DNA from: Podarcis tiliguerta
Lineage: Eukaryota
DNA length: 64,000 nucleotides
Reading direction: 5' to 3' (one strand)
Assembly (NCBI GenBank): GCA_965153285.1
Contig: OZ229126.1
Shown here: positions 9,301 to 63,040 of the stretch, piece by piece
Layout of the letters: each line of letters opens with the position of its first letter
Position numbering within the stretch: the stretch's first letter is position 1
The notes under the pieces: model-generated
Databases searched by the model: none
What the model was told of the DNA's origin: nothing
Seen by the model: only the letters and a program-made list of their open reading frames with translations
Position numbers and translations under genes: made by a program

Positions 9301-10746
9301 ACAGCTTTCCATAAGCATGATGCTAGAAAGTGAGCTAGCATCAGGCTTTAATTTAGTTCGAGGCTTGGAGACAGGACAGTTGATGCAGGAGCAAAAATCC
9401 CAGCTGGCATGCAAGAACATGGCTCAACTGAGTCTTGCTTCTACTTGGCTCTACATTCCTTTCCTTGCAACATGAAAACCTCACCACCTCCTCTCACCTG
9501 AGTATGGACAGAAGACACTGCCAGCACCTCCACATTGAAGACCCCCTTGTGGTTATCCACCCACTTCATGCCAGGCAGCTGTACCTACAAAGAAGCAATG
9601 GGGATAAAATATAATGCCACTAAAGGGTGTCTGCAAAGGACTGAGAGAAGAAGGAAAGCTGGAGATGAAGCAGCAAGGAAAAGAAGAAGAGAACATTCCC
9701 CACTTCAGCATAAGCAAGGAGAAGCCCTTCAAGGGACTCTCCTTTCCCCCAGGCTACTTACAACAGCCGCTACTTACATCAGGGGTGAGTACTGAGTAGC
9801 TGGGAGGAGGCTTGTCAACAGACACAGGCAGGCAAAATTGTCCTGTTCTCAGCCGGCCATGTTGCATGAGGGGGATCCACTGGAGAGAGAGAGAAAAGGC
9901 CTGAGTGAGTCCTAGCAGGATGACATGTCTTCCCTTGTCAGTCCTTCACCTGCCCCTCCCTGCCCACAGACTGCCTTTACTGAGCAGGGGACAGCAGCAA
10001 ATCAAATCTTGCCCGCTGAGAAGGAAGATTTGTTACTGTACCCCACCTTGTAAATCTTCAGTACTTAAGGTGGATGGAAGGACAGGAATCCCCCACAGGA
10101 GATGGAAGGGCACTCTCTGTGTCCAGGGCAGCTGTCTACCAGCTCCATCTGGTATGCAGGCTGAGACGCTACCTGCCCGCAGACTGTCTCGCATGCTCTG
10201 ATTATCTGCCACTTGGACTACTGTAATGCGCTCTATGTGGGGCTACCTTTGAAGATGACCCGGAAACTACAATTAATCCAGAATGCGGCAGCTAGGCTGG
10301 GGACTGGGAGTGGCCACCAAGACCACGTAACATCAGTCCTGAAAGACCTACATTGACTACCAGTGCGTTTCCGAGCACAATTCAAAGTGTTGGTGCTGAC
10401 CTTCAAAGCCCTAAAGAGCCTCAGCCCAGTATACCTGAAGGAGCGACTCCACCCCCATCGTTCAGCCTGGACACTGAGGTGAAGCTCCGAAGGCCTTCTG
10501 GCAGTTTCCTCACTGCAAGAAGCCAAGTTACAGGGCCTTCTTGGTAGTGATGCCTGCCCTGTGGAACGCCCTCCCATCAGATGTCCAGGAAATAAACAAC
10601 TATCTGACTTTCAGAAGACATCTGAAGGCAGCTCTGTTTAGGTAAGTTTTTAATGTCTGGTGTTTTATCATCTTTTTAATATTCTGTTGGGTGCCGCCCA
10701 GAGTGGCTGGGGAAACCCAGTCAGATGGGCAGTGTATAAATAATAA

Positions 10747-10781
<35 letters not shown>

Positions 10782-13700
10782 GGCCTTCCACAGTGTCAGG
10801 ATATGGGTTCATCAAAGTCTTAAAGTTACCAGAAATCTTTTGCCACCGGAGACATGGGTTTTGAACAGAGGAGCTTCTGCACATGAGCTCGGCTTCTGAG
10901 CTACAAAACGCCATGGGTTCTGAAAGCACTCACTGTGTAGCCAACTGGGGTCTCCAAAGGCGTATTTTGCTTCTGCTGACAGCTGATATGGTAAAAGGTA
11001 AAGAGCAGGTGGTGGTTGTCTGTCAGGTTGGCTGGGATCTTTAGCTTGAACTCCTCGTAAAACTCAGGGGACCTGCAGGATACAAGAGGGATGTCACAGT
11101 GGTCTACCAGGAGCCAGCACTGGCTAAGCCTCACCCACCCACAGGGGATCAACTGCTCTTGAATGCATCAGACAATTTCTAATTTCCCTGGGAAAGAAAA
11201 CTGCCAGGAAGAAGATTGCACAGGAGAACAATGCTTATTTTTATGAGGCAGTTAGTTTGGGAGACCGCTGGTTCCTTATCCAGGGAGCTGTGCATCCTGA
11301 TCAAAGCAGCAACTCTCCCCTCCCTGCCTCATTTGCAACAATTATCCCGTACTGCCGCCATAGTTACTTAGGACTCACTTGTTATGGTATACAACAGCTG
11401 TGTAAGCTTCTTTTGCAAAGTCACTGCAACTCGATTTCCCAAAGATGACCTGGGGTTGTTAGGAAAGGCAGAAATAGACTTAGTCAGAGACAGGGAGGCT
11501 GAAGTCCAGCAGACCACAGGGAGGGAGCCTGAGGACGCGACGGTCAAAGGGGCACCTGGAAAGGCTATGCAATTTTCAATGTTTGCTTACAAAAAAAATT
11601 ACCCGGTATGTCTCAACGCTTTTCCACATTGGCTAGAGACTCACCAATGCCACTGCCCTCTCCTTAATCCCCCTGAGAAACTAAAAGGGGTGGTGGCGAC
11701 AGCAGCATCTGCCACCTGAACCAGGGAGGCTACAGAAGGTGTTACTTCGGTCATTGGCTAGAATTCAGCATGGAAGGTCACCAGCTGCCCACCCTTAGCA
11801 TGAAAGCACCACCCCTGGAGGCTTAGATCTGCCACAGATGTGGCTACATTTTCCCACAGATGAGGACTAGGATCTTGACCCAAGAGGGCCTCACAAGAGT
11901 AGAAACTGTGAATCGGCTTAGCAAAACTGTTCCCCCAAAACTACCGTATTTTTCGCTCTATTGGACGCAGTTTTTCCCCTCCAAAAATTGAGGGGAAATG
12001 TGTGTGCGTCCTATGGAGCGAATGCAGGCTTGTGCCATAGCCACGCGCAACCCCTCCGGCAGGGAGAGGCTGCACGGGGCTATGGCTTCTTTAGCCCTGC
12101 GCAGCGTCTCCCGGCAAGGAGAGGCTGCACGGGGCTAAAGGGGAAGGCAAAACAGCGAGCGGGATGGATCCCACTCGCTGCCTTGCCTTCTTCCATAGTT
12201 GCGCGCAACCCCTCCGGCAAGGAGAGGCTGCACGGGGCTGAAGGGGAAGGCAAAACAGCGAGCGGGATGGATCCCACTCGCTGCCTTGCCTTCTTCCATA
12301 GCTGTGCGCAACCCCTCTGGCAAGGAGAGGCTGCACGGGGCTATGGCTTCTTTAGCCCCACGCAGCCTCTCCCGGGAGGGAGAGGCTGCACGGGGCTAAA
12401 GGGGAAGGCAAAACAGCGAGCAGGATCCATCCCGCTCGCTGCTTTGGCTTGTTCCATAGCTGCGCGCAACCCCTCTGGCAGGGAGAGGTTGTGTGCAGCC
12501 TGTACGCTGCTCTTTGGGGCTGGGGGGGGGGAATATTTTTTTCTTGATTTCCGCCCCCTCAAAACTGGGTGCGCCCTATGGTCCGGTGCGCTCAATGGTG
12601 CGAAAAATACGGTATGTATAATTAAGAGAAATGGGAGAGTTCAAAATACAGAGAGGGACTGGCTAGGAGACTAAACTTTTGGGCAAAATGGCATATTGGG
12701 CTCTATGTTTTCCTTTCTTATATTCAGATGCTCCCTTGCTCCCCCACAGCACAGCCTAGATCTTTGCTCCAGAAGACCAGTGGAGCTGCAAAAGTTGTAG
12801 GGAAGCCACAGGGAGTTTGCCTCACTCACTGGCATGGCTTGGCCAGGGTCCTCTCCAGCCATGAACTGGAGCTTCACCGCGATGTTCCTCACTGAACCTT
12901 GACGGCTGCTGAAGTTCAGGCTTTGGGGATAAACATACAGCAGGTTCCTGCAAGAGAACGCGAATCTTTACAGTTCGGAGGGAGAGCGGCAGCAAATGTG
13001 TACATGGCAGAGAGACCCATAACTGATGCGATTGCCAGAACACCTTTTCCTTATCTGCAAAAGAAATCCATGTACACCTGCTGGGAATCAGTTGCACTCA
13101 AAGATTAAGGAACCACTTAGTAGGGATTTTCACAGGCTCTGCAGATATCTTAAAATGTGTTGTGTTCAGTTTCAGCCCACCAACAGCTCCTACTCCATTT
13201 ACTGCCCCTCTGGTCTCCCATTCCCCGCCTGCAGTTGGTCAGAGTTCCATATGCACAGAGCATGCTCAGTCCACACCAAACTGTCTTGGATCCTTTCTCC
13301 TCCCCGCCTCCACCACTTAGTTTACTCCTAATTATTTTTGCATTTCTGCAACTTGTCTCATGTCTCCCTTTTGCGAACGAGCAGTGCCCTTTTGGCTACA
13401 GAATGATCCACATTCCGAGACTGAGTTTGCAATGAGAACATAGGATCCTGCGCAGCTCACCATCGTGCAGAGAGTAAGTGTTTGCATGGAGCGGGGGATG
13501 AGAACACAGAAATGGCAAGAGATGCAGCATAAAGGTAAAAGAGCAGGAGACCTTTGGAGCATCAAGTCTTTGCATCACGCCAGTCCTTCATGCCACCCTC
13601 TCCAAGAGGCAGCAGATTACATAATGTTGCTCCATCCCACAGCCCAGCCAGGATAAACATAGCCAGCATTTGGACAGACACGCCACCTTCCCCTCCCCGC

Positions 13701-16700
13701 AACCTCTTGCAACCCTTAAGAGGTGCCAGAATCCAAAGTTAGCCTTTAGGTGCCTCTACACCTCTGCAATAAGCTGCCATCTGCCAGCATTGTGCAACTC
13801 TGTTGCCCCAGGTCAGAAGTTCTGCGCCCATGCTAAATGTGGGATGAGAGCCCAGGATTAAAATACTGCTGGCTCATTAAATGCTGGAGTGGGTTGCTCA
13901 GTCCAGCTCAATCATCTCTTTCCCCATCGGACCCCTCCCTCGCTTCTGCATATAAAGCGGCAGGCTTACTTCCTTCGGTTTTTCCATTGGCTTGCAAGTC
14001 ACAGCCATGCTGACTTTCCTGTTCCTGAGTATCTTGCTGCCTTCTGCAGCCATGCTTGCCCCTATCCTCACAGGCCCGCAGCAGCCAGCAGCTCAGCAGG
14101 AGGTGAACATTCTTTTCTACGGGGTAATGCAGTTCGCCAGCACGCTGAGTGACCTCTACGAGTCCACGACGCAGAAGCTTGACAAGATCAGACGCAGCTC
14201 CGACTTCTACGAGCGGGGCTTGGAGGAGCTGCGTCGTCAGACCCAAAGAGCCCAGCAGAAGCAGGAAGAGATCAGAGAGATTGTTGAGGGGCTGGAGGTA
14301 ACTGTGTTTAAATTATAAGACCAGGGGAAGGAGGGAAGACAGTGCCAGCCCAGATTAAAAGGCATTACACTAGAGCAAACTGGTAGCCATATTTTGTTGG
14401 TGGGACAACAGGGCCTTGACCAGCTTTATGAAATGCTGCCCCCACCCCTTGCTGATTAGACAGGCAGCTATGATCCTTTGCTTCAGATGCCTGTTGAAAA
14501 CTTTTCCTTTTTAAAAAACCTCCCAGCTGAACTGTTGCTTTCAGTTTGCAGGATTTTTATTTTAAAATGAGGATTTTTATTGTGCACTGTAATTTTGCTT
14601 ACTGACTGGTTTTTATATTACCGTATTGGCCTGAATATAAGCCTCACCTTTCCCCCCAAATTCCGACTGTGAAAAGTTAAAGTGCGGCTTATATTCGTGA
14701 CCTGCAGCCAGGAGCACGGAGCAAACAGCGGCAGGAGTGTGGCAAAGCGGTGCCTGCCCCACATGTAGTCCCCCATCCTCTCCCCCAAGGCCTGGAAGGG
14801 AGACAGCGAGGAAGTGGAAAGGCTGCCAGCAAAACAATGCAGCTTCTCCCCCCCCCCCCCCCCAGTATGCAGCCAGGAGCAGCAAGAAATGGAGCAGCTT
14901 ATATTTGGGTATTTTTACATTTCCCCCTCTCCAATTTTAAAGGTGCAGCTTATATTCCGGGTGCGGCTTATATTCAGGCCAATGCGGTATATGCTCTTGT
15001 CCACAGTTTGGATATTCTGTGTTAAGCATTTTACAATTTAAAAACAAAAACAAATGAATAATGAAACCTAGGCAGGGGCTTACACCTATAGCTCCATATT
15101 CAATCTTGTAATCTTCCAACCATACAATGTTAGTTTCCCTACCTAGTCCACACCCCCAGGGTCCCATCTTCATCAGAGAGCCCCTTTGGTCAGTCTTCCT
15201 CATCCACCATTCCTGCTCTTTCTTTGATAGGATGAGAGCCTGGCAAGATGGCAGCAGGCTCACAGCAACAAGGAAACGTTGCAGAAGATGCTTGCGGGTC
15301 AGCAGGACCTAGTGCGACAAGTGAAGGCGCTCGAAGGGATGCTGGCTGTCATGGAAGAGCGAGGTTTCCAAAATAAGGGACGGGAATTTTCTGCTTTGAA
15401 GGTAATCCGCCACCTTCTCCTCTGTAAGGTGGCACCCTAAGTCACTTGTTCTGGCCCCCTTGCTCTCCAAAATCTCTAGGGGGCTTGAAGAAGTGCCTAG
15501 ACAAGTGAACTCTGAGCTAATCTGTACAGCATGAGAAGCCATCTCCATGTAGCCCCACTGATCACTACACTCAAACTTACAGATACGGTAATGAACCAAC
15601 TCATGCATAGGTCAATGGACATGCACTCATATAGACAATCTTGCCCCTCACCCCTCTAGCTCTTCCATTCATAGAGGGTGCAATCATTGAATGGGCCTTC
15701 TCCATAGGAGGAGGCATCCAATTGGTAGTGAAACCACAGCTCCACCAGAGGCTTCTAGCTAGTCAGCCAGCAGCCACAGGGAACTTGCCGAGGAGGATGG
15801 TTCAGCTTAGTCAAGCAGCCACAGGGAGAGCAAAGGGGAAAGATAAAGAGGCTGCACCCCTGAAAGAAACTGGCAGTGATGGGGACTGTCTTACTCCAAA
15901 TGTCCCAGTGGAGGTGGGGACTTCCTCACCACCATTTACGGATCCTAGGAGGTTGCAAGCCTCCACAATCCCGACTATGTGCAAACTCTTCGGCATGGAC
16001 AGAAGAAGCCACAGTGGCCACCACCTGGCATTGCACTGCTATCAAAGGCAGCCAGAGATCATGGAACCTTCTAAGCCTTTGACAGTGTTCCATGATCAGG
16101 AGAAGCCCTACTGGAACCTCTTTGTGCCATGCAAAGCTGTTATTTGCAGCTGAGCCAATGTAATTGTGATTTCTGCGTTGTAGAAGGCTGGATTAGATGA
16201 TCCTCAGGGTCCCTTCCAACTCTACAAGTCTATGATTCTGCAATAATAATTCCCATGGCCAGATGAAGTCCTGACAGAACCCCTGTGGGCTCCATGAAGC
16301 TGTCGTTTTGAGGGCTGGCTGGGTGAGAAGGAGTTAAGTTGGGAATTTGTGTTATTCAAAGCCAGATAAGAATTCGGGAGCCTTGTAACCCTTTCCTCCT
16401 CTTTGAGCCAAGCTTGATGGGGCCCCAAAGCTCACATCCAGGCCTGAGCTAGGAAAGCTTCACACCAAGCACAGCGTAACATTCCAGCTCTCTCAAAAGC
16501 AACACACAGATGCTCGAAAGCTCAGTGGCAGGATCTCATTGCTCTGAAATATCAAGCCAGATCCCAACCCGTTTTAAACTCATAAGCTTATTTTCAGCTT
16601 ATCCAAATCTCTTTTAAGGTACCGTCTGCTTTAACAGCATGAACAGCAGGGAGGGGTGTGCGTGGAGAGGCAGAGAGGGTAAGGATTAGGGCTGTCCGAG

Positions 16701-19700
16701 CGCAGTGCATAAATAAGACTAGGCAAGAGGGGAAGTACTGTTTTGGGGGGACAGGGGTCAGGCAGGTGTGGAGGACTCCCTGGTCCTTAATGGGGTAACT
16801 GTGCCCCTGAAGGACCAGGTGCGCAGCCTGGGAGTCATTTTGGACTCCCAGCTGTCCATGGAGGCGCAGGTCAATTCTGTGTCCAGGGCAGCTGTCTACC
16901 AGCTCCATCTGGTATGCAGGCTGAGACCCTATCTGCCCACAGACTGTCTCGCCAGAGTGGTGCATGCTCTAGTTATCTCCCGCTTGGACTACTAGTGTGC
17001 ACTCTATATGGGACTACCATTGAAGGTGACCTGGAAACTACAAGTAATCCAGAATGTGGCAGCTAGACTGGGGACTGGGAGTGGCCGCTGAGACCATATA
17101 ACACTGGTCCTGAAAGACCTACATTGGCTCCCAATATGTTTCCAAGCACAATTCAAAGTGGTGGTGCTGACCTTCAAAGCCCTAAACGGCCTCGGCCCAG
17201 TATACCTAAAGGAGTGTCTCCACCCCCATCGTTCAGCCCAGACACTGTGGTCTAGCTCTGAGGGCCTTCTGGCGGTTCCCTCACTGCGAGAAGTGAGGTT
17301 ATAGGGAACCAGGCAGAGGGCCTTCTTGGTCGTGATGCCTGCCCTGTGGAACGCCCTCCCATCAGATGTCAAGGAAATAAACAACTATCTGACTTTTAGA
17401 AGATATCTGAAGGCAGCCCTGTTTAGGGAAGTTTTTAATGTCTGATGTTTTATCGTGTTTTTAATATTCTGTTGGGAGCCGCCCAGAGTGACTGGGGAAA
17501 CACAGCCAGATGGGCACGGTATAAATAATAAATTATTGTTAAGTTATAGAGGGAAACCTGCATGTAAGCAGCAGCAGCAGCAGCAGTAGTACTTCTGTCT
17601 CCTCTTGGCTCTTGATATCAACTTGTCATAAGAGCACCACACTCCTCTCTCTATTAGCACTGCTAGTAAAGTGAGAATGTTACCCCTTGCAGAAAGCATT
17701 AGTAATGGCTGCAACAGCTCTCCAGGATTGACTTCTTGGGCCAAGGAGAGTACTAGGCTGAAACTGTGACTGTATTACAACCGGAAAACATCCCTATGGC
17801 ACAGTCCTGCTGAAGAGGGATCATATTCTGGCCTGGTTGTGAGGGGAAGGGGCAGAGAGAAGGCCTGGTAACTGTATGAATAGATGGCCCAGAATGGGAA
17901 GTGAATGAAGTCATGGTTTAGGAGTCCCCAGGGTTGAAAAATGAGATGAGGAATTCCCCAGGGTTGCAGACTGAGATTAAGGGGTCTAAAACATCAGAAA
18001 CTGCAAGCAATGGATAAAAGAACCCCCACCTCTCGGTTAACCGATATCATCTCCCCTCAGGCACACATGCAACAACAGAATCTCACCATCTGGTCCCTGC
18101 TGAGAGCTACCCAACAGCAGCAGCAGCAAATGGCTCGGCAGACAGAACAGCTGCTCTGGATCCAAAGACTAGCAAGGCAAGAGGTGCTTCTTGGGGACAT
18201 TTCATAAACAAAGATCAAGTTAGTGTGTTGCTGTGATATGGGCAGCTCCTGGCTCAAAGCTGCTGCCATTTGCTAGTTGTGGTAACCATCTTTCTGATGC
18301 AGGGCACTCATGCCAAGATCTCAGTACTGTAAAGTACCCTTACTATAGTAATGGGCGCTGTGGTCTAAACCACTGAGCCTCTTGGGCTTGCCAATCAGAA
18401 GGTCGACGGTTCAAATCCCCGCAACGGAGTGAGCTCCCGTTGCTCTGTCCCAGATCCTGCCAACCTAGCACACCAGTGCAAGCAGATAAATATGGACCGC
18501 TGTGGCAGAAAGGTAAACAGCGTTTCCATGTGCTCTGGTTTCCATCACGGTGTCCTGTTATGCCAGAAGCGGTTTAGTTGTGCTGGCCACATGACCCGGA
18601 AGCTGTCTGTGGACAAATGCCGGCTCCCTTGGTCTGAAAGTGAGATGAGCGCCGCAACCCCATCCTATAGTAATAATCATGGGAGGGTACGAGAGGAGGG
18701 AAGAAACAAGTCTGATCCACAAGACACAAAGTGCAACACACCTGCCTCTAACTTGCTAAGAAAGCAAAGACGAGGACATACGCTAAGAGCCCAGGCCTCT
18801 GGGGCCACAAATAAGGAAGTCCACTTGAGGGAATGTAGGTTTGATCTTTGAGATCCGCTTGCTTAATGCCGCCTTACTTGTCCTTGTTTCCAGATGAAGA
18901 ATCACAAAGTTGTGAAGCTGAACGTGGGGGACTTGGACAGAGACACCACGGCAACATTCATGCCAAAGAGGGGATCGTGATTTTTGGAGCAGAAAACCTT
19001 CTGCTCACAGCGGCTTGGTGGCAACTATTTGCACCTGTCCTGAAACATGGCTGATTGTGTCATAGCATCCACAGGGTGGCCAGGAGGAGATCAGCAGCAG
19101 GCTAGAAGAATCATCCAGCCTCATGACGAGAACTGTCTAACACCTGCCTGACCTAATCTAAATATGTAGATCCTCACCTTCTGAAGTGAGGAACTGCGAG
19201 TCCTCCAAAGGATCTTTAGAAAAGTCGCAGTATCAGCAAAACAAGCAACATTTCTGAAAGCTACATTGCCTTACCCAAGGCTACTGACTGCTGCATCAGA
19301 GATGGATCTCATTATGCAGAGCGCATTATGTGTACACACTGAACATCTGCTTTTCAGTGTGGATGGGCATTCTGTGCTGCAATAGTGCCTTGGCTGCCAG
19401 GGCTTACCAGGAATGAGAGTACAATATTATTAGTGCTTCACCAGATCAGACACTGGAAGGAAGCCGCAACAGTTGCTGCCAAAGGACTACAGTTTTATCT
19501 ACTGTGCGCCGAAAGAGATCTGGGTCATTATTCAGTATGATGACAGCGGCAGCTGAACACTTAAGGCCAGAATCTTGGTGCTGACCTCTTGACAACCCTG
19601 TGGTCATATTGCTACATAGCAACCTGCAGCCTGACAGGGGATGGGAGGAAGCTGGCAGCTTGTCACAGTTTACTTAAAATTAGTACTGAGAACTGCAAGA

Positions 19701-22700
19701 TCAACCAAGGAGAAACTCATCCCTTTGTTCCTGAGCACACAGTTTTAAGCAGTCAACACACATTATTCACAGAGGGCTAGGATAATGAGTGGAAGTCCTG
19801 AGTGGAGTTTCCTATAAAGGGAGGCAGCTTGTTGGCAACTGAGAAAAAACAGGTTACAGATGAACTGGTGGAGAAGGAGAGGGAAGGAAAGCTGCAACCA
19901 ATACCTTGTTCAACCAATATCAGTTTGCCATTGTAGCATTTGTTTCTGCCACTTCAGAATACAGAGGAATTCAGTACCACAAGGCTGAAAAGATCAGAGC
20001 TGAAAAGCATGGAATTTAAGCACCACAAAGCACACAAAACAGAGCTGCTTTTGCACCCGCTGGGCAGCAAAGCTGCTTTAAACCTACCTGTATATTGTGT
20101 GCGGTGTGTAGACTTCCTTGACTGGAAACTCCAGGATCTCCTTGGTGGGCCGGACTCGGAGGTCAGGATAGGGCAGCACATGCAGAAGTTCCGGCGACAG
20201 GCAGTAATGGGGGTTCTCCGGCACAGGAGAAATGTCGATCTTGAGCTGGGCTGTGAGGCAGAAACAACAGTGTGTGTGGGCGTGTAAGGAGAGTTTGCAT
20301 ACAGAAGCCAACATGACAAAACTGACAGACCTCTGAGACTGAGAATGTGTGGTAGAGGGCTGGAGAGTTCTAGGGTGCTTGCGTTTCCTGATCTCTATTA
20401 TATCACAAAGAAGAATGAGCACACACACAGATTGCACAAGGAATGGAAATGGCCAACAGAAACTATGGAGAGGCCTCCTTCACCTCAAACAGAGAACAAT
20501 GATGAAGGATGGTTTAAAAACTTTTAAAATAATAATAAACTATGCTGATTTGCTCTTGCTCTCATTTGACTGGATTCTGAAGCACCTACAGCTATTTCTT
20601 GTAATGACTGATCTTTCTGCCTCACTTTGGGAGGAAACTGAACACAAACCCAGACACAGACACACACACACACACACACACAGACTTTTTCTCCGCTTTC
20701 TGTTCTCAGGAACCATTTCCTGCTCTTGGCAAAAGTGGGATCTGGCCAAAGAGTTTTCTTGCTTTTGTCACAACAGACCACATGGCTACCACAATCAACA
20801 CCAGCTCCAGAATTTCCCACTCCACAGAGCTCTCAACAAGAGGCAGTGCCTTGTCACAGGCTGATTTACAGGCACCCACCTTACCTGTGACTGGTCGGAG
20901 CCTTCTTAGGACAGATGATGGCCGCCTCATGTCTGCCAGGAACTTGTATAGGTCCTCATCACTGAGGCGATCACCTTCCTAGAGGTGTTTTTTTTTGGGG
21001 GGGGAGAGGAAAAGAGAAGGGGAGAGTTGAACCAGAACAGGAGAATAACATCCACCAAGACAGAGGCATTAAGACCCCTGTGAGTTCCTCAGTGGATGTG
21101 GCACTGCTCTAGCAATACTTGTTCCAATTTACTCATTAACCCTATGTATAGACTGTCCATTGCATTGCACTGCTAGGACTATTTCCAATAAGTCTAAAAA
21201 CATAATACAAGGAAACACATCAAAGCATACATAGGATAAAATCCAATCTTAAACCATTACAAATGATTGTTTGAGCAGTAAAATACAAGATAAGATCTTG
21301 ACACCAGACTGAAATAAAGCAATTCACCTGATGCCCTGAACTGGATTTTAACCTACATCAGAAACTCATTAACAGAGAGGCAGTATAAGCCTCTAGGGAC
21401 AGGGAATTTCACGACTGGGGCACCACTACAGAGAAGGCGTTGCCAAACAAGTAGATGTGAGAGGCACCTGCGATATTCCTCAGGTTCATTTTAAGACTCT
21501 GCCAGAACGTATACTTCATTGTATACAACTTAACTTTCAAAGTCATAAATTGCAAGTCACTTGAAGGTTCTGTCAAGGATCTAAAGCTCTGTTAGAGCGT
21601 ACAAGTTCTGAACATGCACTGAAGACTCTTCTGGAAAGCAGTGGCGTAGCGTGGGGATGCAGGGGGGGCCGGCCGCACCGGGCGCAACATCTGGCGGGGC
21701 GTGCTCGCACTCGCAGCTCTCTGCCCCTACCTGGCTCACTCACTCACTCTCTCTCACTGCAGTGCTGACTGTGCGAATCCGATCCAAGCCGCCGGGTCGC
21801 CGCCCACTGTGGAGGGGAGGGTGCCAGGCATGCGGTGCGGTGCGGAGAGAGAGCGAGGGACTATCTGGGGGAGGGACAGTGCAGCGGGGGGGGGGCGCAA
21901 ATTACTTGCCTTGCCCCGGGTTAGGGGGCGCAAATTACTTGCCTTGCCCCGGGTGCTGACAACCCACGCTACGCCACTGGTGGAAAGTGCCTGAGAATCT
22001 TGCAGTTCTAAGAAAAGGAGGAATCCTGCAAATAAAGGCGCAGAATCCTGCTGGGCCCTGGGCTGTGACCATACCCCACCTTCAACCCATTTCCCATCAT
22101 TTTATGCTGAGTGGGGGAAACAATGAAAGAAGAATCACAGCTTCTTATGAGGAAAGAGAAAATTCTCTAGCACAAACAGGTATTTGCCTGCAAATCTCTG
22201 GTCCTGTTAGCTGCACTCCTACAGATGTGAAAACCAAAAGACAGGGATATTATGAATCGGTCCAGACAGCCCAGACTCCAAGCCTCCCACCTGCTTGAAG
22301 AAGTTGGTGACGGTGAGGGTAGCTGGGCGGAAGTTGCTGAAGCTGCACATCTCCTCCCCAACACTCATGCGCTCGTATGTTTTCCTCTTGCGCTCATTCC
22401 AGGTTCCCTTGCGGTCTAGAAGAGAGGAAGATATGTTCAATAGGTGAAGTGCACACATGCACAAATAAGGAGTCATATTTTGGCAATAGGCAATGGTGAG
22501 AAGAGAACCGGGCTCTGCTAGGAACTCATGCTTGGTATTAGGTGAGTGGCTATCACTGCCTCTCAGCATCATGTCCACAGCACTGGGGAGGGGGGTGTGG
22601 CCTACTCTGCAAGGTTGTTGTGAGGGCAAACCTAATGGAGACCACAACGCTGTACAACAGCGCAATGGTAGTGCTAATAGGCATTTTGCAGAAACTACCC

Positions 22701-34200: not shown

Positions 34201-37200
34201 CCTTCCCAAAAGCTTTGTGCAGATGTCAAAAGTCAGTTATATTGCCATTTAAATCAGTCTTCCAAAGCAGCATTCAGCCACGCTGAAATTGTTAATGTGA
34301 AGATTAAAAAATAGTCTTTGCCTACCACGTTTTCACTGGTCAATACTGCAGAACTAGCAAGTTCTAATGCAGAAAACTGCCAGCAAATTGCCAAGTACTT
34401 TTTCCTTGGCAACTCTTACATACGACTGTCCTGAGGTGAAGGGGGCTCTGCAGTGAAAGGCTGCAGGAGTAAATGGAAGCAGAGGTGCTTATCACAAGTA
34501 TCAGAATAACCACAATCCACAATTAATAATCCCACCACTTACTCATCTTCAGGGATGCCAGGTTCCAGTGTTCGACAGTCCCGCGTTTGGTGGATCACCT
34601 CCAGGTCATCCGTGGGAAACTCAACCAGATCACGAAGTGGACCGGGCTCAGCATCTGGCACGTGGCTGTCAAGGTACTCCTCAAAGTCTACGGGCTCCAC
34701 CACTTCTGTCAGAGGCACCTTAGAGAAGAAGGTCAAGGAGTGGGGTAAGGAAGAGGAACCTACAAGTCAGAAAGTCTTTAGCGCTCAATCAGAACAAATG
34801 GCCATTTGGGGTTTCTCCAGATTGATGTTTGCTCTGATTTAGAACCAAACAGAGAGTTTTCCCTATCCAAGAGATATGCCTCCTCCTCTTTTTGGCTACA
34901 GGCCTGACTGGGCATGAAATTAAGTACAAATAAGCAGCTACAGCAATATTTTTTTAAAAAAACAAACGAACACAATTGTATAAGTTGTGTCTTTGTTTTC
35001 AATTTGTATTGTGTTGTTTTATGCACTGTGACTTGCTTTTTATTGATTACAGTTCAGAATAGTGTTTCCCAAAGTGGGTAGATCACCATTTGCTTTGATT
35101 GTTCACTAAACAGCAGTTTTTCCCTCGAAAGCAAGAGTCAAGCAGAAAACTGCTCCGGGTCCCTTCTTTCTAGGCACGGGACAAGCAGGAGTGTGGACAA
35201 GCTTTCACTTGCTGAAGTTGTCTGGTGTGCCTGAATCACTCCTAGCTGTAGCACATCGTAACAAGGATGATAAGGATTTGTCCCAAGGCCTGAGTCTGGT
35301 ATTCTTCATTTTATAGACTGGGAAATGGATGAACACCTCCCCATGAATCCATGATTCCAACATGTTTCAGGTAAATGCCCACCATTACCACCAAGTTAGA
35401 CTATGAGAGCTAAGAAAAAAGTGTGTGAATTTCCCACCTCTTCCCCTCAGTCCAACAGAGGAGTCAGAGAAATACAGAGGTTTGGGGGCATTTCTTGGTC
35501 CTTCACAGAAGCTTCTGACGGAGGCGCCTCCCTTCATCTTGAAGGACAACAACAGGCCTGAGGGAGTTGCAGTCCTTCCAAGATGAGAATGCAGAAACCA
35601 AGGTGAGGAAGACTGCAGGAGCTCATCTTTAAGACTAGTAAATGTATTCCAGTTCCCACCACAATGCCCAACTAACCAGCACAAAAGTCATCTGAGCCGC
35701 CACAACACATAGCTCTGCTCTTAAATTATTACAATTACAACATAGTCTAAGTGACTTTATTGAGCACTATTGTTCAGAGAGGAGCAAGAAGAAACCGGTG
35801 CTGTGGGGAGGAGAAGAAAGACCCCTTCGTTTCCTCAAGGCACAATTAACACTGCATGTCACAGGCCACTTGGAAACTGTCCAAATGCAAGCATTTGTTC
35901 TTATGACAAATGGCAAAAGCTAAATTTTCTCTCCCTCCCATCTCCACCAACTGTCTTGCTGTAGCTGAGCAAGGGAGAGAGGCTACTAAGAGGCTAGACT
36001 CTCTTCTTCTGACAGCTTCTCAGGCACAATGAAACCAGGGAGGAATCCCCTGAAAAAGCCAGAGGCTAAATGACAGACATGCAAGAAGGGAAGAATGGGG
36101 AGAGGACACAAGCACAGAGGTCTGGGAGACTAAAACTATTTTCAAAGACACCCAGCCAAACCCCACCCAAAAGTTTCCAATTTCAAACTCCTTCACACCT
36201 GGGAAATTGAAATCCACCTTGTCCTCACCCAATAAGTGCTTTAGGAAATACTACATAAGGGAAGCCCAGGAGTTTTTAGAAGGCCACAGATGTTTGTTTG
36301 TTTGTTTTAATGCTGAAACTCCAGAAAATAAAGCATAGTTTCTGCAGCTGTTCTGGTCCTTATGCCACCCAGGAAGAACAAATAAAATGCAGCCGATATC
36401 AGAGATTGGGACTCTACTATTTGGATTGCGACTGGAGGAATAAGGAAACCAATTCATATGTAACCATTGTTCCCCAATATGCTTCTTGCAGAAATGAAAG
36501 GAGATATTAGTGGTTCTTATGCTTCTTCCAATTTTCCAACTCCGAAGAGGCCTCAGGTAGGTCCACAGTGACAGTAAGCCAAAAGGAAATCCTGTCTCCC
36601 ATGAGCAAATAGTGGAAGTCAGCAACCCACTGGCAAAGGGTAGCAATTGGCTAAGAAAGGGAAAGATTTAGGACAGAAATGCAGCACATAGTCAAACTAT
36701 GGAACACTCCCTGAGAAGGCAGAGGTCGCCACCAACTTGATGGCTTTAAAAGATTAGAGAATTTAATTAGGAATGTTTAAATATAGATATCATTTAATTC
36801 AGTTGTTGTTATTTTTCTAAAAAAAACAACCCCAGTTCTAACTAAGAGTACTTCCTAAAGCACGAGCAAAATGGTTGTCCCTGCTATATGTTGGATTACT
36901 AGCAATTTCTAAAATGCCCTGGAAATGGGCAGTTTCCAAATTATGGTTGTCTGATACTGCCTATTTTCTTCGGGTGAACAGATTTTCTTCCCTGCCTTAT
37001 TAGCCAGAAGCTGCAGTGTTTTCTGCCAGATCTCCACCCCAGACCATGACATACTACTGAATAACTCACCGACTGTGGGGGGCCACCCCGCTTCTTGGAA
37101 AGCTGAGGGGAGTTGCCATATTCTCGGGACACCTGCTTCCTTACTTCAGCTGCCACCGTCCTGTAGGGGAGGAAGAAAACAATAAAACATCCACTTTTCT

Positions 37201-50329: not shown

Positions 50330-50800
50330 TCCGCCTTGGCGTCGCCCGCGCCCGGCGCGCCTTCGGCTCTGGGGTGGCTTCCCTCAGAAAAGGTGCCTGG
50401 GCGCCCCTCCGCTTCTCCGGCGCAGCCTCGCGCCAGGGAAGGAGCGGCCGGCCGAGGAGGAGGAGGAGGCGGGACCCCGGCCCCGAAGCCCCGCCTCGGA
50501 GGCCAGGGCCGCCCCTGGCGGCTGAGGAGGCCGAGGCAACCCCAGCCTCTCTCTTTCCCTCGCTCGCTTTCTCCCGTCGGCCTCGGGATCGTTGCCTGAG
50601 GGAGGGCGGGAACGGCGCGAGGCAGGATGGGGCGGCCTTCTTTCCTTCCCTCAGTCGGGATCCTGCCCGGCGGCAGGTGCCTCAGGTTGTCTCGGTGGCA
50701 GGGCCGGCCCGCCCTCGAGGCGAGCTGAGGTGGCTGCCTCAGGCGGCAGGGTTCGCAGGAGCAGGTGCGGACTCTGGTCATAGGGCACCATTCGCGAGGA
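50070..50800. promoter_or_regulatory. CpG island / DOCK6 promoter
   Basis: Very GC- and CpG-rich stretch spanning DOCK6 exon 1, with GC-box-like GGCGGG motifs. Confidence 0.88.
50286..50329 (-). CDS. DOCK6: DOCK6 coding exon 1 (44 nt) [15 protein letters not shown]
   Basis: ATG at 50329 in a CpG island; donor CG|GTGAG. Confidence 0.95.
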
Positions 50801-50906
50801 CAAGTTTCATATTCAAAATATTTTATATTTTGATTTTGTTCTGTGAACCATCCTGAGACTTCCAGGTATAGGGCGGGATATAAATGCTCTATATATTGAA
50901 TTTATA

Positions 50907-51587: not shown

Positions 51588-51774
51588 NNNNNNNNNNNNN
51601 NNNNNNNNNNNNNNNNNNNNNNNNNNNNNNNNNNNNNNNNNNNNNNNNNNNNNNNNNNNNNNNNNNNNNNNNNNNNNNNNNNNNNNNNNNNNNNNNNNNN
51701 NNNNNNNNNNNNNNNNNNNNNNNNNNNNNNNNNNNNNNNNNNNNNNNNNNNNNNNNNNNNNNNNNNNNNNNNNN
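51588..51774. other. Assembly gap (187 N)
   Basis: Run of N. Confidence 1.
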
Positions 51775-62275: not shown

Positions 62276-62459
62276 CATGTGATTAGAAACATGTTTTAAC
62301 ATGTTAACATCCTCAAAAGTGGATGTTAAGAGTTAAGGAAGCTGGAAACCTCTTTATATGTACAAAAGCTAGCGGAATGACAGAGTTCACTGCAGAATGA
62401 CAGCTTCCTAGATGAAAAATGGCACTTTCTTACCTCTGTTCTCTCCCTTGTCTGTCCAG

Positions 62460-62666
62460 CTGGGGGGCCTGGCTTTGCTGGGCATCGGCATCTGGGTGAA
62501 GGTGGACGGTGGTTCCTTTGCGAAGGTCCTGGGAGCCGCAGCTCCACAGTTAATGCAGCTGATCAATGTGGGCTACCTGCTAATTGCTGTTGGCACCTTC
62601 CTCCTTCTCATGGGCTTCATGGGATGCTGGGGGGCCATGAAGGAAAGCAAATGCCTTTTGCTTGTG
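62460..62666 (+). CDS. TSPAN16: Tetraspanin second coding exon (69 codons) LGGLALLGIGIWVKVDG...GFMGCWGAMKESKCLLLV; the gene continues past the right edge
   Basis: GTCCAG| acceptor, |GTAAGT donor; tetraspanin signature GFxGCxGAxxESKC. The symbol is assigned by synteny with DOCK6. Confidence 0.82.
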
Positions 62667-62730
62667 GTAAGTGCCCTAATTAAAATTGGGAAGGAAACTC
62701 TCCCTGGGCCAGGCTTGGGTGTCATGGAAC

Positions 62731-63040
62731 GAGAGCCAGTGTGGTGTAGTGGTTAAGAGCGGTAGTCTCGTAATCTGGAGAACCGGGTTCGCGTCTCCGC
62801 TCCTCCACATGCAGCTGCTGGGTGACCATGGGCCAGTCACACTTCTCTGAAGTCTCTCAGCCCCACTCACCTCACAGAGTGTTTGTCGTGGGGGAGGAAG
62901 GGAAAGGAGAATGTTAGCTGCTTTGAGACTCCTGAAGGGGAGTGAAAGGCGGGATATCAAATCCAAACTCCTCTTCTTCTTCTTCTTCTTCTTCTTCTTC
63001 TTCTTCTTCTTCTTCTTCTTTTTCTTCTTCTTCTTCTTCT
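62731..63040 (+). mobile_element. tRNA-derived CORE-type SINE (Squam3-like) with (TTC)n tail
   Basis: Box A GTGGTGTAGTGG, box B-like GGTTCGCGTCTCC, CORE-like GTGACC.TGGGCCAGTCAC; older relatives near 22490-22630, 24020-24200 and 51785-51930. Confidence 0.8.

What the first reader, a model, noticed from the sequence alone, without database searches (positions are those of the whole stretch)
13951..18207. Intact reptile ANGPTL8 hidden antisense in DOCK6 intron 14
Seen in sequence: a TATA box, Kozak ATG, signal peptide and three phase-0 GT-AG exons give a 202-aa secreted coiled-coil protein with no fibrinogen domain, lying wholly between DOCK6 exons 14 and 15. The ORF track shows only fragments and misses exon 2 in this frame. 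Established: mammalian ANGPTL8 sits in the same DOCK6 intron, its paralogue ANGPTL3 sits in DOCK7, and it partners ANGPTL3/4 to regulate lipoprotein lipase on feeding. As I recall, early descriptions treated it as mammal-restricted. Inference: a conserved squamate copy means the ANGPTL3-4-8 lipid-partitioning system dates at least to the amniote ancestor and may operate in an intermittently feeding ectotherm. It may already be auto-annotated in some reptile genomes; I cannot check.
Basis: partly seen in the sequence, partly recalled or inferred. Interest (0 to 1): 0.85.

Follow-up and report, generated by a model that had tools for sequence, protein, structure and literature searches.

The report
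Lizard ANGPTL8 gene inside DOCK6
This is a real, intact lizard copy of ANGPTL8, a small secreted regulator of fat uptake, lying backwards inside an intron of DOCK6 as in humans; it is already auto-annotated in a related lizard and many other non-mammals, although papers up to 2026 still call the gene mammal-only.

Summary
The gene model is confirmed base by base. It has a TATA box at 13952, an ATG at 14007 and three phase-0 GT-AG coding exons (14007-14297, 15231-15401, 18061-18207), giving 202 aa.

All three exons line up end to end with NCBI's 'angiopoietin-like protein 8 isoform X1' of Zootoca vivipara, also exactly 202 aa, at 88, 91 and 94% identity. They also match named ANGPTL8 of snakes, marsupials, amphibians, lungfish and ray-finned fish. 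No protein of ANGPTL3/4 length reached significance and no fibrinogen domain is present.

The gene lies antisense in a 7.1-kb intron of a DOCK-C/D gene, just upstream of its first DHR-1 (C2) exon. A tetraspanin exon lies beyond the DOCK 5' end, which fits the DOCK6 locus.

One refinement: a conserved candidate fourth coding exon (18894-18980) suggests an alternative 223-aa isoform.

The gene is ordinary and already known to databases. The interest is that open-access papers from 2017, 2024 and 2026 still state that ANGPTL8 is absent outside mammals. The scan has one related note on this same window and none on other DNA.

The parts
13952..13957 (+). TATA box (TATAAA), 55 nt upstream of the start codon; the implied 5'UTR is about 25-30 nt
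   Evidence: Read in the sequence. Function is inferred from position only.
14007..14297 (+). Coding exon 1 (97 codons): hydrophobic signal-like N-terminus and the first helix, which carries the family's conserved motif (EVN.L.YG..QF...L)
   Evidence: Translation. phmmer gave 44 hits at E<1e-3, including opossum ANGPTL8 at 3.9e-10. 88% identity to Zootoca ANGPTL8 aa 1-97. Donor GAG|GTAACT.
14298..15230 (+). Intron 1 (phase 0, GT-AG)
   Evidence: A close relative's contig (P0001) reads through it. It differs at 7 of 50 read-through codons plus an indel, against 1 of 97 codons in exon 1 (Fisher p = 0.002).
15231..15401 (+). Coding exon 2 (57 codons), middle of the long helix
   Evidence: Translation. 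91% identity to Zootoca ANGPTL8 aa 98-154. 59% to Rhineura isoform X3, E 2e-18. Collinear weak match to wombat ANGPTL8.
15402..18060 (+). Intron 2 (phase 0, GT-AG); contains a decayed retrotransposon fragment at about 16720-17540
18061..18207 (+). Coding exon 3 (48 codons plus TAA), C-terminal helix
   Evidence: Translation. 94% identity to Zootoca ANGPTL8 aa 155-202, including the same C-terminal tail. 91% to Rhineura X3. 36% to wombat ANGPTL8 aa 153-185, E 2e-4.
18894..18980 (+). Candidate alternative fourth coding exon (28 codons plus TGA). It would be reached from a weak phase-0 donor GAG|GTGCTT at 18183/18184 and would give a 223-aa isoform.
   Evidence: Strong acceptor ...TTGTTTCCAG|. 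54% identity over 26 aa, E 8e-8, to the C-terminus (aa 192-217) of Rhineura isoform X3, which is 221 aa. No RNA evidence was obtained here.
20088..20253 (-). Host DOCK exon immediately upstream (in the DOCK reading direction) of the host intron
   Evidence: Stop-free DOCK-like segment with AG/GT boundaries read. Called DOCK-like by eye only; it gave no Pfam hit of its own.
12829..12947 (-). Host DOCK exon immediately downstream of the host intron: start of the DHR-1 (C2) domain
   Evidence: Pfam PF14429 DOCK-C2, profile positions 3-43, E 4e-8. Boundaries.
10931..11080 (-). Further DOCK DHR-1 (C2) exon
   Evidence: Pfam PF14429, profile positions 65-113, E 1.2e-17.
34542..34709 (-). DOCK N-terminal exon, which defines the DOCK-C/D subfamily
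   Evidence: Pfam PF11878 DOCK_C-D_N, E 1.8e-17.
62412..62753 (+). Tetraspanin exon beyond the 5' end of the DOCK gene, in divergent orientation; probably the TSPAN16 orthologue. Used as a synteny marker for DOCK6.
   Evidence: Pfam PF00335, E 6e-11. Gene order KANK2-DOCK6-ANGPTL8-TSPAN16-RAB3D is given in PMC10475376.

Best explanation
The locus is the orthologue of ANGPTL8 (lipasin/betatrophin) in a lacertid-like lizard.

Shown here:
- An intact three-exon gene on the + strand encodes a 202-aa protein with a hydrophobic leader followed by two long helices and no fibrinogen-like domain.
- It is nested antisense in the intron of a DOCK-C/D gene that precedes the first DHR-1 exon. This is the same arrangement as human ANGPTL8 in DOCK6 intron 14.

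Inferred from the mammalian system (PMC8319833, PMC12773762):
- The protein is secreted, mainly from liver and fat, after feeding.
- It joins ANGPTL3 in a helical hetero-oligomer that inhibits and unfolds lipoprotein lipase in oxidative tissues. It also tempers ANGPTL4 in fat.
- The net effect is to route dietary triglyceride to storage.

An alternative 3' exon may give a second isoform with a different C-terminal tail.
For: - Splice structure and reading frame were read directly.
- An exhaustive phmmer search with exon 1 returned 44 significant hits, almost all proteins of 100-300 aa (two are low-complexity repeat proteins). None has the length of ANGPTL3 or ANGPTL4.
- Where sources name these hits, they call them ANGPTL8. 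This holds for opossum, wombat, Tasmanian devil, Pleurodeles, Discoglossus, Protopterus, Latimeria, Amia, Polyodon, Astyanax, Pimephales, Liasis, Pituophis and Python (UniProt name).
- The RefSeq-named Zootoca vivipara ANGPTL8 isoform X1 is exactly 202 aa. It aligns with exons 1, 2 and 3 at aa 1-97, 98-154 and 155-202 with 88, 91 and 94% identity.
- All five near-invariant family positions (A28, L36, G39, Q42, L75) are kept.
- In a maximum-likelihood tree the window sits inside a squamate clade (99/91). Turtle is sister (91/86), mammals are monophyletic (96/93), and fishes lie outside. The tree follows the species tree.
- Constraint: against a close relative's contig, exon 1 differs at 1 of 97 codons and the read-through intron at 7 of 50 plus an indel (Fisher p = 0.002).
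- The AlphaFold2 model of the Zootoca orthologue is all-helical with mean pLDDT 79.
- Host gene: Pfam DOCK-C2 and DOCK_C-D_N exons on the minus strand, and a tetraspanin neighbour as in the published DOCK6 locus order.
- Human ANGPTL8 lies in DOCK6 intron 14 on the opposite strand (PMC5592946).
Against:
- No canonical AATAAA follows the stop on the + strand before 20534; only variant hexamers are present.
- The 3' end is ambiguous: read-through to TAA at 18205-18207, or splicing to the candidate exon 4.
- The motif in the first helix differs from the family consensus. The window has M for L and A for S. Lacertids have S where most species have Q, at what (from memory) is the third polar position of the ANGPTL4 motif.
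- The host was shown to be DOCK-C/D by Pfam, and DOCK6 only through synteny and my unaided recollection of the human sequences.
- No ANGPTL3/4 sequences could be fetched, so the tree has no paralogue outgroup.
- Binding to ANGPTL3/4 and inhibition of LPL are extrapolated from mammals.
Confidence: 0.9

Rival explanations
1. It is an ANGPTL8 orthologue, but the main product is the four-exon form of 223 aa. In this form exon 3 ends at 18183 and splices to 18894-18980. The 202-aa form would then be an intron-retaining minor isoform.
For: - The exon-4 ORF has a strong acceptor.
- It is 54% identical (E 8e-8) to the C-terminus of the 221-aa isoform X3 of Rhineura.
- From memory, human ANGPTL8 has four exons.
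Against: - RefSeq's Zootoca isoform X1 is the 202-aa read-through form, with the same C-terminal tail as the window.
- The required donor GAG|GTGCTT is weak.
- The tails after the conserved LLWIQ differ among snakes, Rhineura and mammals, so this region is probably under little constraint.
Confidence: 0.3
2. It is a true ANGPTL8 orthologue whose role in lizards differs from the mammalian one. For example, it might act alone or only with ANGPTL4, or not be regulated by feeding, so that no ANGPTL3/8 complex controls LPL in reptiles.
For:
- GPIHBP1, another LPL partner, is confined to mammals (PMC8319833), so the reptile LPL system is not identical to the mammalian one.
- Only about 30% identity remains to marsupial ANGPTL8.
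Against: - The family-wide near-invariant positions lie in and just after the motif region, which mammalian work links to LPL inhibition. They are kept from ray-finned fish to mammals.
- The APOA5 residues that contact ANGPTL3/8 are conserved in birds and reptiles (PMC12773762).
Confidence: 0.2
3. It is an unexpressed or decaying relic (pseudogene) that happens to keep an open frame.
For: There is no canonical polyadenylation hexamer close to the stop.
Against: - The frame is intact and all splice sites are canonical.
- It is 90% identical, without gaps, to a RefSeq model in another lacertid.
- Exon 1 is far better conserved than the adjacent intron.
- Orthologues are intact across squamates.
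Confidence: 0.04
4. It is an N-terminal-only derivative of ANGPTL3 or ANGPTL4 rather than ANGPTL8.
For: ANGPTL8 shares ancestry with ANGPTL3/4 (PMC4172915). One frog homologue is auto-named 'angiopoietin-related protein 3-like'.
Against: - No hit of ANGPTL3/4 length reached E<1e-3 in the exhaustive search, while named ANGPTL8s did.
- The ANGPTL3 host would be DOCK7. The tetraspanin neighbour here fits DOCK6.
- No FReD exons are present.
Confidence: 0.02

Closest known systems
Zootoca vivipara angiopoietin-like protein 8 isoform X1 (NCBI RefSeq model, P0065, 202 aa)
   Same: Same length and the same three coding segments, with boundaries at aa 97/98 and 154/155. The C-terminal tail is the same. 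Overall 182 of 202 residues are identical.
   Different: There are 20 substitutions, two of them inside the first-helix motif (L41M, S44A). The species is different, and the window's own protein was not found as an annotated entry in the collection searched.
Mammalian ANGPTL8 (human 198 aa, in DOCK6 intron 14, antisense; PMC5592946)
   Same: Similar size, a signal-like leader, an all-helical fold without a fibrinogen domain, and antisense nesting in the DOCK intron before DHR-1. All three exons match marsupial ANGPTL8 collinearly.
   Different: Only about 30% identity. Non-mammals have YGVLQFS where, from memory, placentals have HGTLQLG. Here there are three coding exons, or four with the candidate exon. 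Expression, partners and regulation are untested in reptiles.
ANGPTL3 (nested in DOCK7) and ANGPTL4
   Same: A related N-terminal coiled coil carrying an LPL-inhibitory motif. ANGPTL3 is likewise nested in a DOCK-C gene (PMC4172915, PMC8319833).
   Different: Both carry a C-terminal fibrinogen-like domain and are 400-460 aa long. Nothing of that length reached significance with exon 1, and no FReD exon is present here.

Membership tests
ANGPTL8 | Significant sequence similarity to named ANGPTL8 that is closer than to ANGPTL3/4 | tested here: met
   Hits are named ANGPTL8 from lizard, snakes, marsupials, amphibians, lungfish and ray-finned fish. No hit has ANGPTL3/4 length. No joint tree with the paralogues could be built.
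ANGPTL8 | Short (about 200 aa) helical protein lacking the fibrinogen-like domain | tested here: met
   202 aa. No Pfam fibrinogen hit. No FReD-like ORF in the host intron (by eye). AlphaFold2 model of the 90%-identical Zootoca orthologue has helices 30-140 and 147-201.
ANGPTL8 | N-terminal secretion signal | tested here: inconclusive
   There is a hydrophobic stretch at residues 2-18 followed by small residues, and the orthologue model has low confidence over residues 1-29. No signal-peptide predictor was available.
ANGPTL8 | Conserved LPL-inhibitory-type motif in the first helix | tested here: met
   The family consensus EVN.L.YGVLQFS..L and the near-invariant positions A28, L36, G39, Q42 and L75 are all kept. 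The window differs at two motif positions (M41, A44). Activity was not tested.
ANGPTL8 | Nested antisense in the DOCK6 intron that precedes the DHR-1 domain (intron 14 in human) | tested here: met
   DOCK-C2 and DOCK_C-D_N exons lie on the minus strand. The host intron is 12948-20087. DOCK6, rather than DOCK7 or DOCK8, rests on the tetraspanin neighbour. The exon number is only estimated from about 10 recognised upstream exons.
ANGPTL8 | Vertical descent (orthology) shown by a gene tree that follows the species tree | tested here: met
   squamates 99/91, turtle sister 91/86, mammals 96/93, ray-finned fishes outside. Only exon 1 of the window was used.
ANGPTL8 | Feeding-induced expression in liver and adipose tissue | not testable with these tools
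ANGPTL8 | Forms complexes with ANGPTL3 and ANGPTL4 and modulates LPL | not testable with these tools
ANGPTL3/ANGPTL4 | C-terminal fibrinogen-like domain | tested here: not met

The most novel reading that the evidence does not exclude
The whole ANGPTL3/8 switch for lipoprotein lipase, together with its APOA5 brake, is ancestral to bony vertebrates and still works in ectothermic reptiles that feed intermittently. It would not then be a mammalian invention. This would explain why the APOA5 residues that contact ANGPTL3/8 are conserved in birds and reptiles, a point the 2026 PNAS paper (PMC12773762) left as a puzzle on the assumption that ANGPTL8 is mammal-only.
Probability: 0.5. Interest if true: 0.65.

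Novelty: already known. Interest (0 to 1): 0.4.

Why it matters
As a sequence feature this is an ordinary orthologue. NCBI already calls the same gene ANGPTL8 in Zootoca vivipara, and also in a snake, amphibians, lungfish and several ray-finned fishes.

What matters is the gap between databases and papers.
- PMC5237311 (2017) reports ANGPTL8 absent from Anolis and all non-mammals and proposes lineage-specific deletions.
[quoted passage not shown] The locus shows that at least squamates keep an intact, constrained copy in the ancestral position. The dating of the ANGPTL3-4-8 system should therefore move back to bony vertebrates. The role of APOA5 and ANGPTL3 in reptiles can be tested with the true partner present.

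My nine literature searches covered only open-access papers and bioRxiv. A subscription paper describing non-mammalian ANGPTL8 could exist.

Tried and rejected
No homologue DNA, no dN/dS and no direct look at other species' DOCK6 introns were possible.
The joined 202-aa protein was never built or sent. The tree used exon 1 only, and the structure was predicted for the Zootoca orthologue P0065.
- PDB by sequence, with exon 1 and with a family profile: only generic coiled coils. No ANGPTL coiled-coil chain was found.
- Pfam has no ANGPTL8 family. The named ANGPTL8s tested also gave only sub-threshold coiled-coil noise.
- A profile search meant to pull in ANGPTL3/4 as outgroups was swamped by candidates (8000 scored, 13 hits), so there is no paralogue outgroup.
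- The ESM Atlas gave no usable hit for a DOCK exon. Naming the host DOCK6 rests on synteny. My recollection of the human DOCK6 and DOCK7 sequences favours DOCK6, but that is a lead and not a test.
- Polyadenylation signal: there is no AATAAA on the + strand between 18207 and 20534.
- ARAGORN and the repeat finder found nothing notable in 13000-20500.
- One literature search with loose terms returned nothing relevant.
- No fold search was run, because long helices match any coiled coil.

Full report
**Observation**

- TATAAA sits at 13952-13957 and the ATG at 14007.
- Exon 1 ends at 14297 (GAG|GTAACT).
- Exon 2 is 15231-15401, with a pyrimidine-rich acceptor and donor AAG|GTAATC.
- Exon 3 is 18061-18207 and ends in TAA.
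- All introns are phase 0 and the product is 97+57+48 = 202 aa.

**Homology**

The joined protein was not built or sent anywhere.

An exhaustive phmmer search of exon 1 against 1.8 billion representatives gave 44 hits at E<1e-3. Almost all are proteins of 100-300 aa; two are low-complexity repeat proteins. None has the length of ANGPTL3 or ANGPTL4.

Source names for these clusters include 'angiopoietin-like protein 8' for the following:
- opossum (E 3.9e-10), wombat and Tasmanian devil;
- Pleurodeles and Discoglossus;
- Protopterus;
- Amia and Astyanax.

Latimeria, Polyodon and Pimephales carry the gene symbol ANGPTL8/angptl8.

Squamate entries are named unevenly.
- 'Uncharacterized protein' or 'hypothetical protein' in Anolis, Rhineura, Python, Lerista and Phrynosoma.
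- 'Angiopoietin-like protein 8' in Liasis and Pituophis.
- A mistaken 'golgin' name in Ahaetulla.

The decisive hit came from searching with the Rhineura isoform X3. NCBI's 'angiopoietin-like protein 8 isoform X1 [Zootoca vivipara]' is exactly 202 aa. It aligns with exon 1 at aa 1-97 (88%), exon 2 at aa 98-154 (91%) and exon 3 at aa 155-202 (94%), down to the same C-terminal tail.

Each exon also matches wombat ANGPTL8 collinearly.

**Family features**

Pfam has no ANGPTL8 model. Neither the exons nor the named ANGPTL8s tested give anything but sub-threshold coiled-coil noise, and no fibrinogen domain appears. No FReD-like ORF is visible on the + strand of the host intron (by eye).

The alignments show five near-invariant positions (A28, L36, G39, Q42, L75), four of them in the first-helix motif (EVN.L.YGVLQFS..L). 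The window keeps all five. It carries two private changes within the motif, M41 and A44. An earlier scan note on this window (s1-821526) flags the same motif as diverged.

An AlphaFold2 model of the Zootoca orthologue, built on the family alignment, has a low-confidence leader (residues 1-29) and two long helices, 30-140 and 147-201, with mean pLDDT 79.

**Orthology and constraint**

I built a maximum-likelihood tree of 34 family members, using exon 1 for the window.
- The window falls in a squamate clade (99/91).
- Turtle is sister (91/86).
- Mammals are monophyletic (96/93).
- Amphibians, lungfish plus coelacanth, and ray-finned fishes lie further out.

The tree follows the species tree, which is what one orthologous gene inherited vertically would give.

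A contig from a very close relative (P0001) reads through intron 1. Exon 1 differs at 1 of 97 codons. The following 50 intron 'codons' differ at 7 and are then broken by an indel (Fisher p = 0.002). This is a small but direct sign of purifying selection.

Several database models run on into intron-derived sequence just after the residues that end the window's exons 1 and 2. This fits conserved intron positions.

**Host gene**

The minus strand carries DOCK exons.
- Pfam DOCK_C-D_N at 34542-34709.
- Pfam DOCK-C2 at 12830-12955 (profile positions 3-43) and at 10931-11080 (positions 65-113).
- About ten further DOCK-like exons, recognised by eye, between 37.1 kb and 20.1 kb.

The host intron runs from 12948 to 20087. 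It lies between an exon at 20088-20253 and the first DHR-1 exon at 12829-12947.

Beyond the DOCK 5' end, a tetraspanin exon lies on the + strand at 62412-62753 (Pfam E 6e-11). This fits the order KANK2-DOCK6-ANGPTL8-TSPAN16-RAB3D printed in PMC10475376.

Human ANGPTL8 lies in DOCK6 intron 14 on the opposite strand (PMC5592946). Counting the recognised exons and allowing for a few short ones I could not see, 'intron 14' is plausible here but not proven.

**Refinement**

Downstream of the TAA, a strong acceptor (…TTGTTTCCAG|) opens a 28-codon ORF at 18894-18980. It is 54% identical (E 8e-8) to the C-terminus of Rhineura isoform X3. Using the weak phase-0 donor GAG|GTGCTT at 18183/18184 would give a 223-aa isoform, against 221 aa in Rhineura.

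The sequence after the conserved LLWIQ varies among taxa, so the tail is probably not critical. Only RNA data can say which form dominates.

No canonical AATAAA follows on the + strand before 20534.

**What could not be done**

- No ANGPTL3/4 sequences could be obtained, so there is no paralogue outgroup and no complex prediction.

**Mechanism**

What is shown is identity, architecture, position and constraint.

What is inferred from mammalian work (PMC8319833; PMC12773762) is that the protein:
- is secreted on feeding;
- assembles with ANGPTL3 into a complex whose inhibitory motif unfolds LPL;
- is opposed by APOA5.

I put this at about 0.5-0.6 for lizards.

**Novelty**

At the level of databases this is already known. 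At the level of papers it is not.
- PMC5237311 (2017) reports the gene absent from Anolis and all non-mammals despite conserved synteny.
- PMC10475376 (2023) repeats this.
- PMC12773762 (January 2026) states that it is 'unique to mammals', while noting that the APOA5 residues that contact ANGPTL3/8 are conserved in birds and reptiles.

Seven literature searches aimed at non-mammalian ANGPTL8 found no paper describing one. The library holds only open-access papers and preprints.

**Verdict**

This is a correct and careful reading of an ordinary orthologue that annotation pipelines already recognise. Its modest interest comes from correcting a claim that persists in the literature.

Noticed in passing
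window 62412-62753 (+): An exon encoding the first two transmembrane helices of a tetraspanin (Pfam PF00335, E 6e-11). It lies beyond the 5' end of the DOCK gene in divergent orientation and is probably the TSPAN16 orthologue.
   Followed up: partly
proteins P0045, P0005 (Anolis) and P0061 (Phrynosoma): The iguanian gene models lack the conserved C-terminal helix (the window's exon 3). Two of them (the older Anolis model P0005 and Phrynosoma P0061) end in a short shared tail beginning MKSHTG. This is either a shared annotation error or a real change in Iguania. It may be why the 2017 study missed the gene in Anolis.
   Followed up: no
one search hit list: No bird or crocodilian protein appears among the 44 significant hits, although a turtle (Caretta, unnamed, 193 aa) does. 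ANGPTL8 may be lost in archosaurs, or it may be missing from their assemblies.
   Followed up: no
database names: Orthologues carry misleading automatic names: 'golgin subfamily A member 6-like protein 6' (Ahaetulla), 'putative uncharacterized protein DDB_G0268364' (Python isoform X1) and 'angiopoietin-related protein 3-like' (Pelobates, 178 aa).
   Followed up: no
proteins P0002 and P0056 (Rhineura isoforms X2 and X1): In these isoforms the C-terminal half is the frame-shifted reading of exons 3 and 4. The same alternative frame is open in the window at 18018-18233. They look like products of an alternative acceptor and are probably non-functional.
   Followed up: partly
window about 16720-17540 (+) and 10236-10610 (-): Decayed copies of a retrotransposon 3' ORF with internal stops. 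One lies in ANGPTL8 intron 2 and one in a DOCK intron.
   Followed up: no
window 18343-18670 (+); similar at about 32340, 55260, 58610 and 61440: Copies of what looks like a tRNA-derived SINE, identified from memory of squamate SINEs. One lies between exon 3 and the candidate exon 4. ARAGORN finds no intact tRNA in 13000-20500.
   Followed up: partly
window 50150-50900 (-) and 37130-37162 (-): A GC-rich stretch that probably holds the DOCK promoter and first exon. The second DOCK exon (motif [11 protein letters not shown]) lies at about 37.1 kb, which implies a first intron of about 13 kb.
   Followed up: no
window 51588-51774: A run of 187 N (assembly gap or masked).
   Followed up: no
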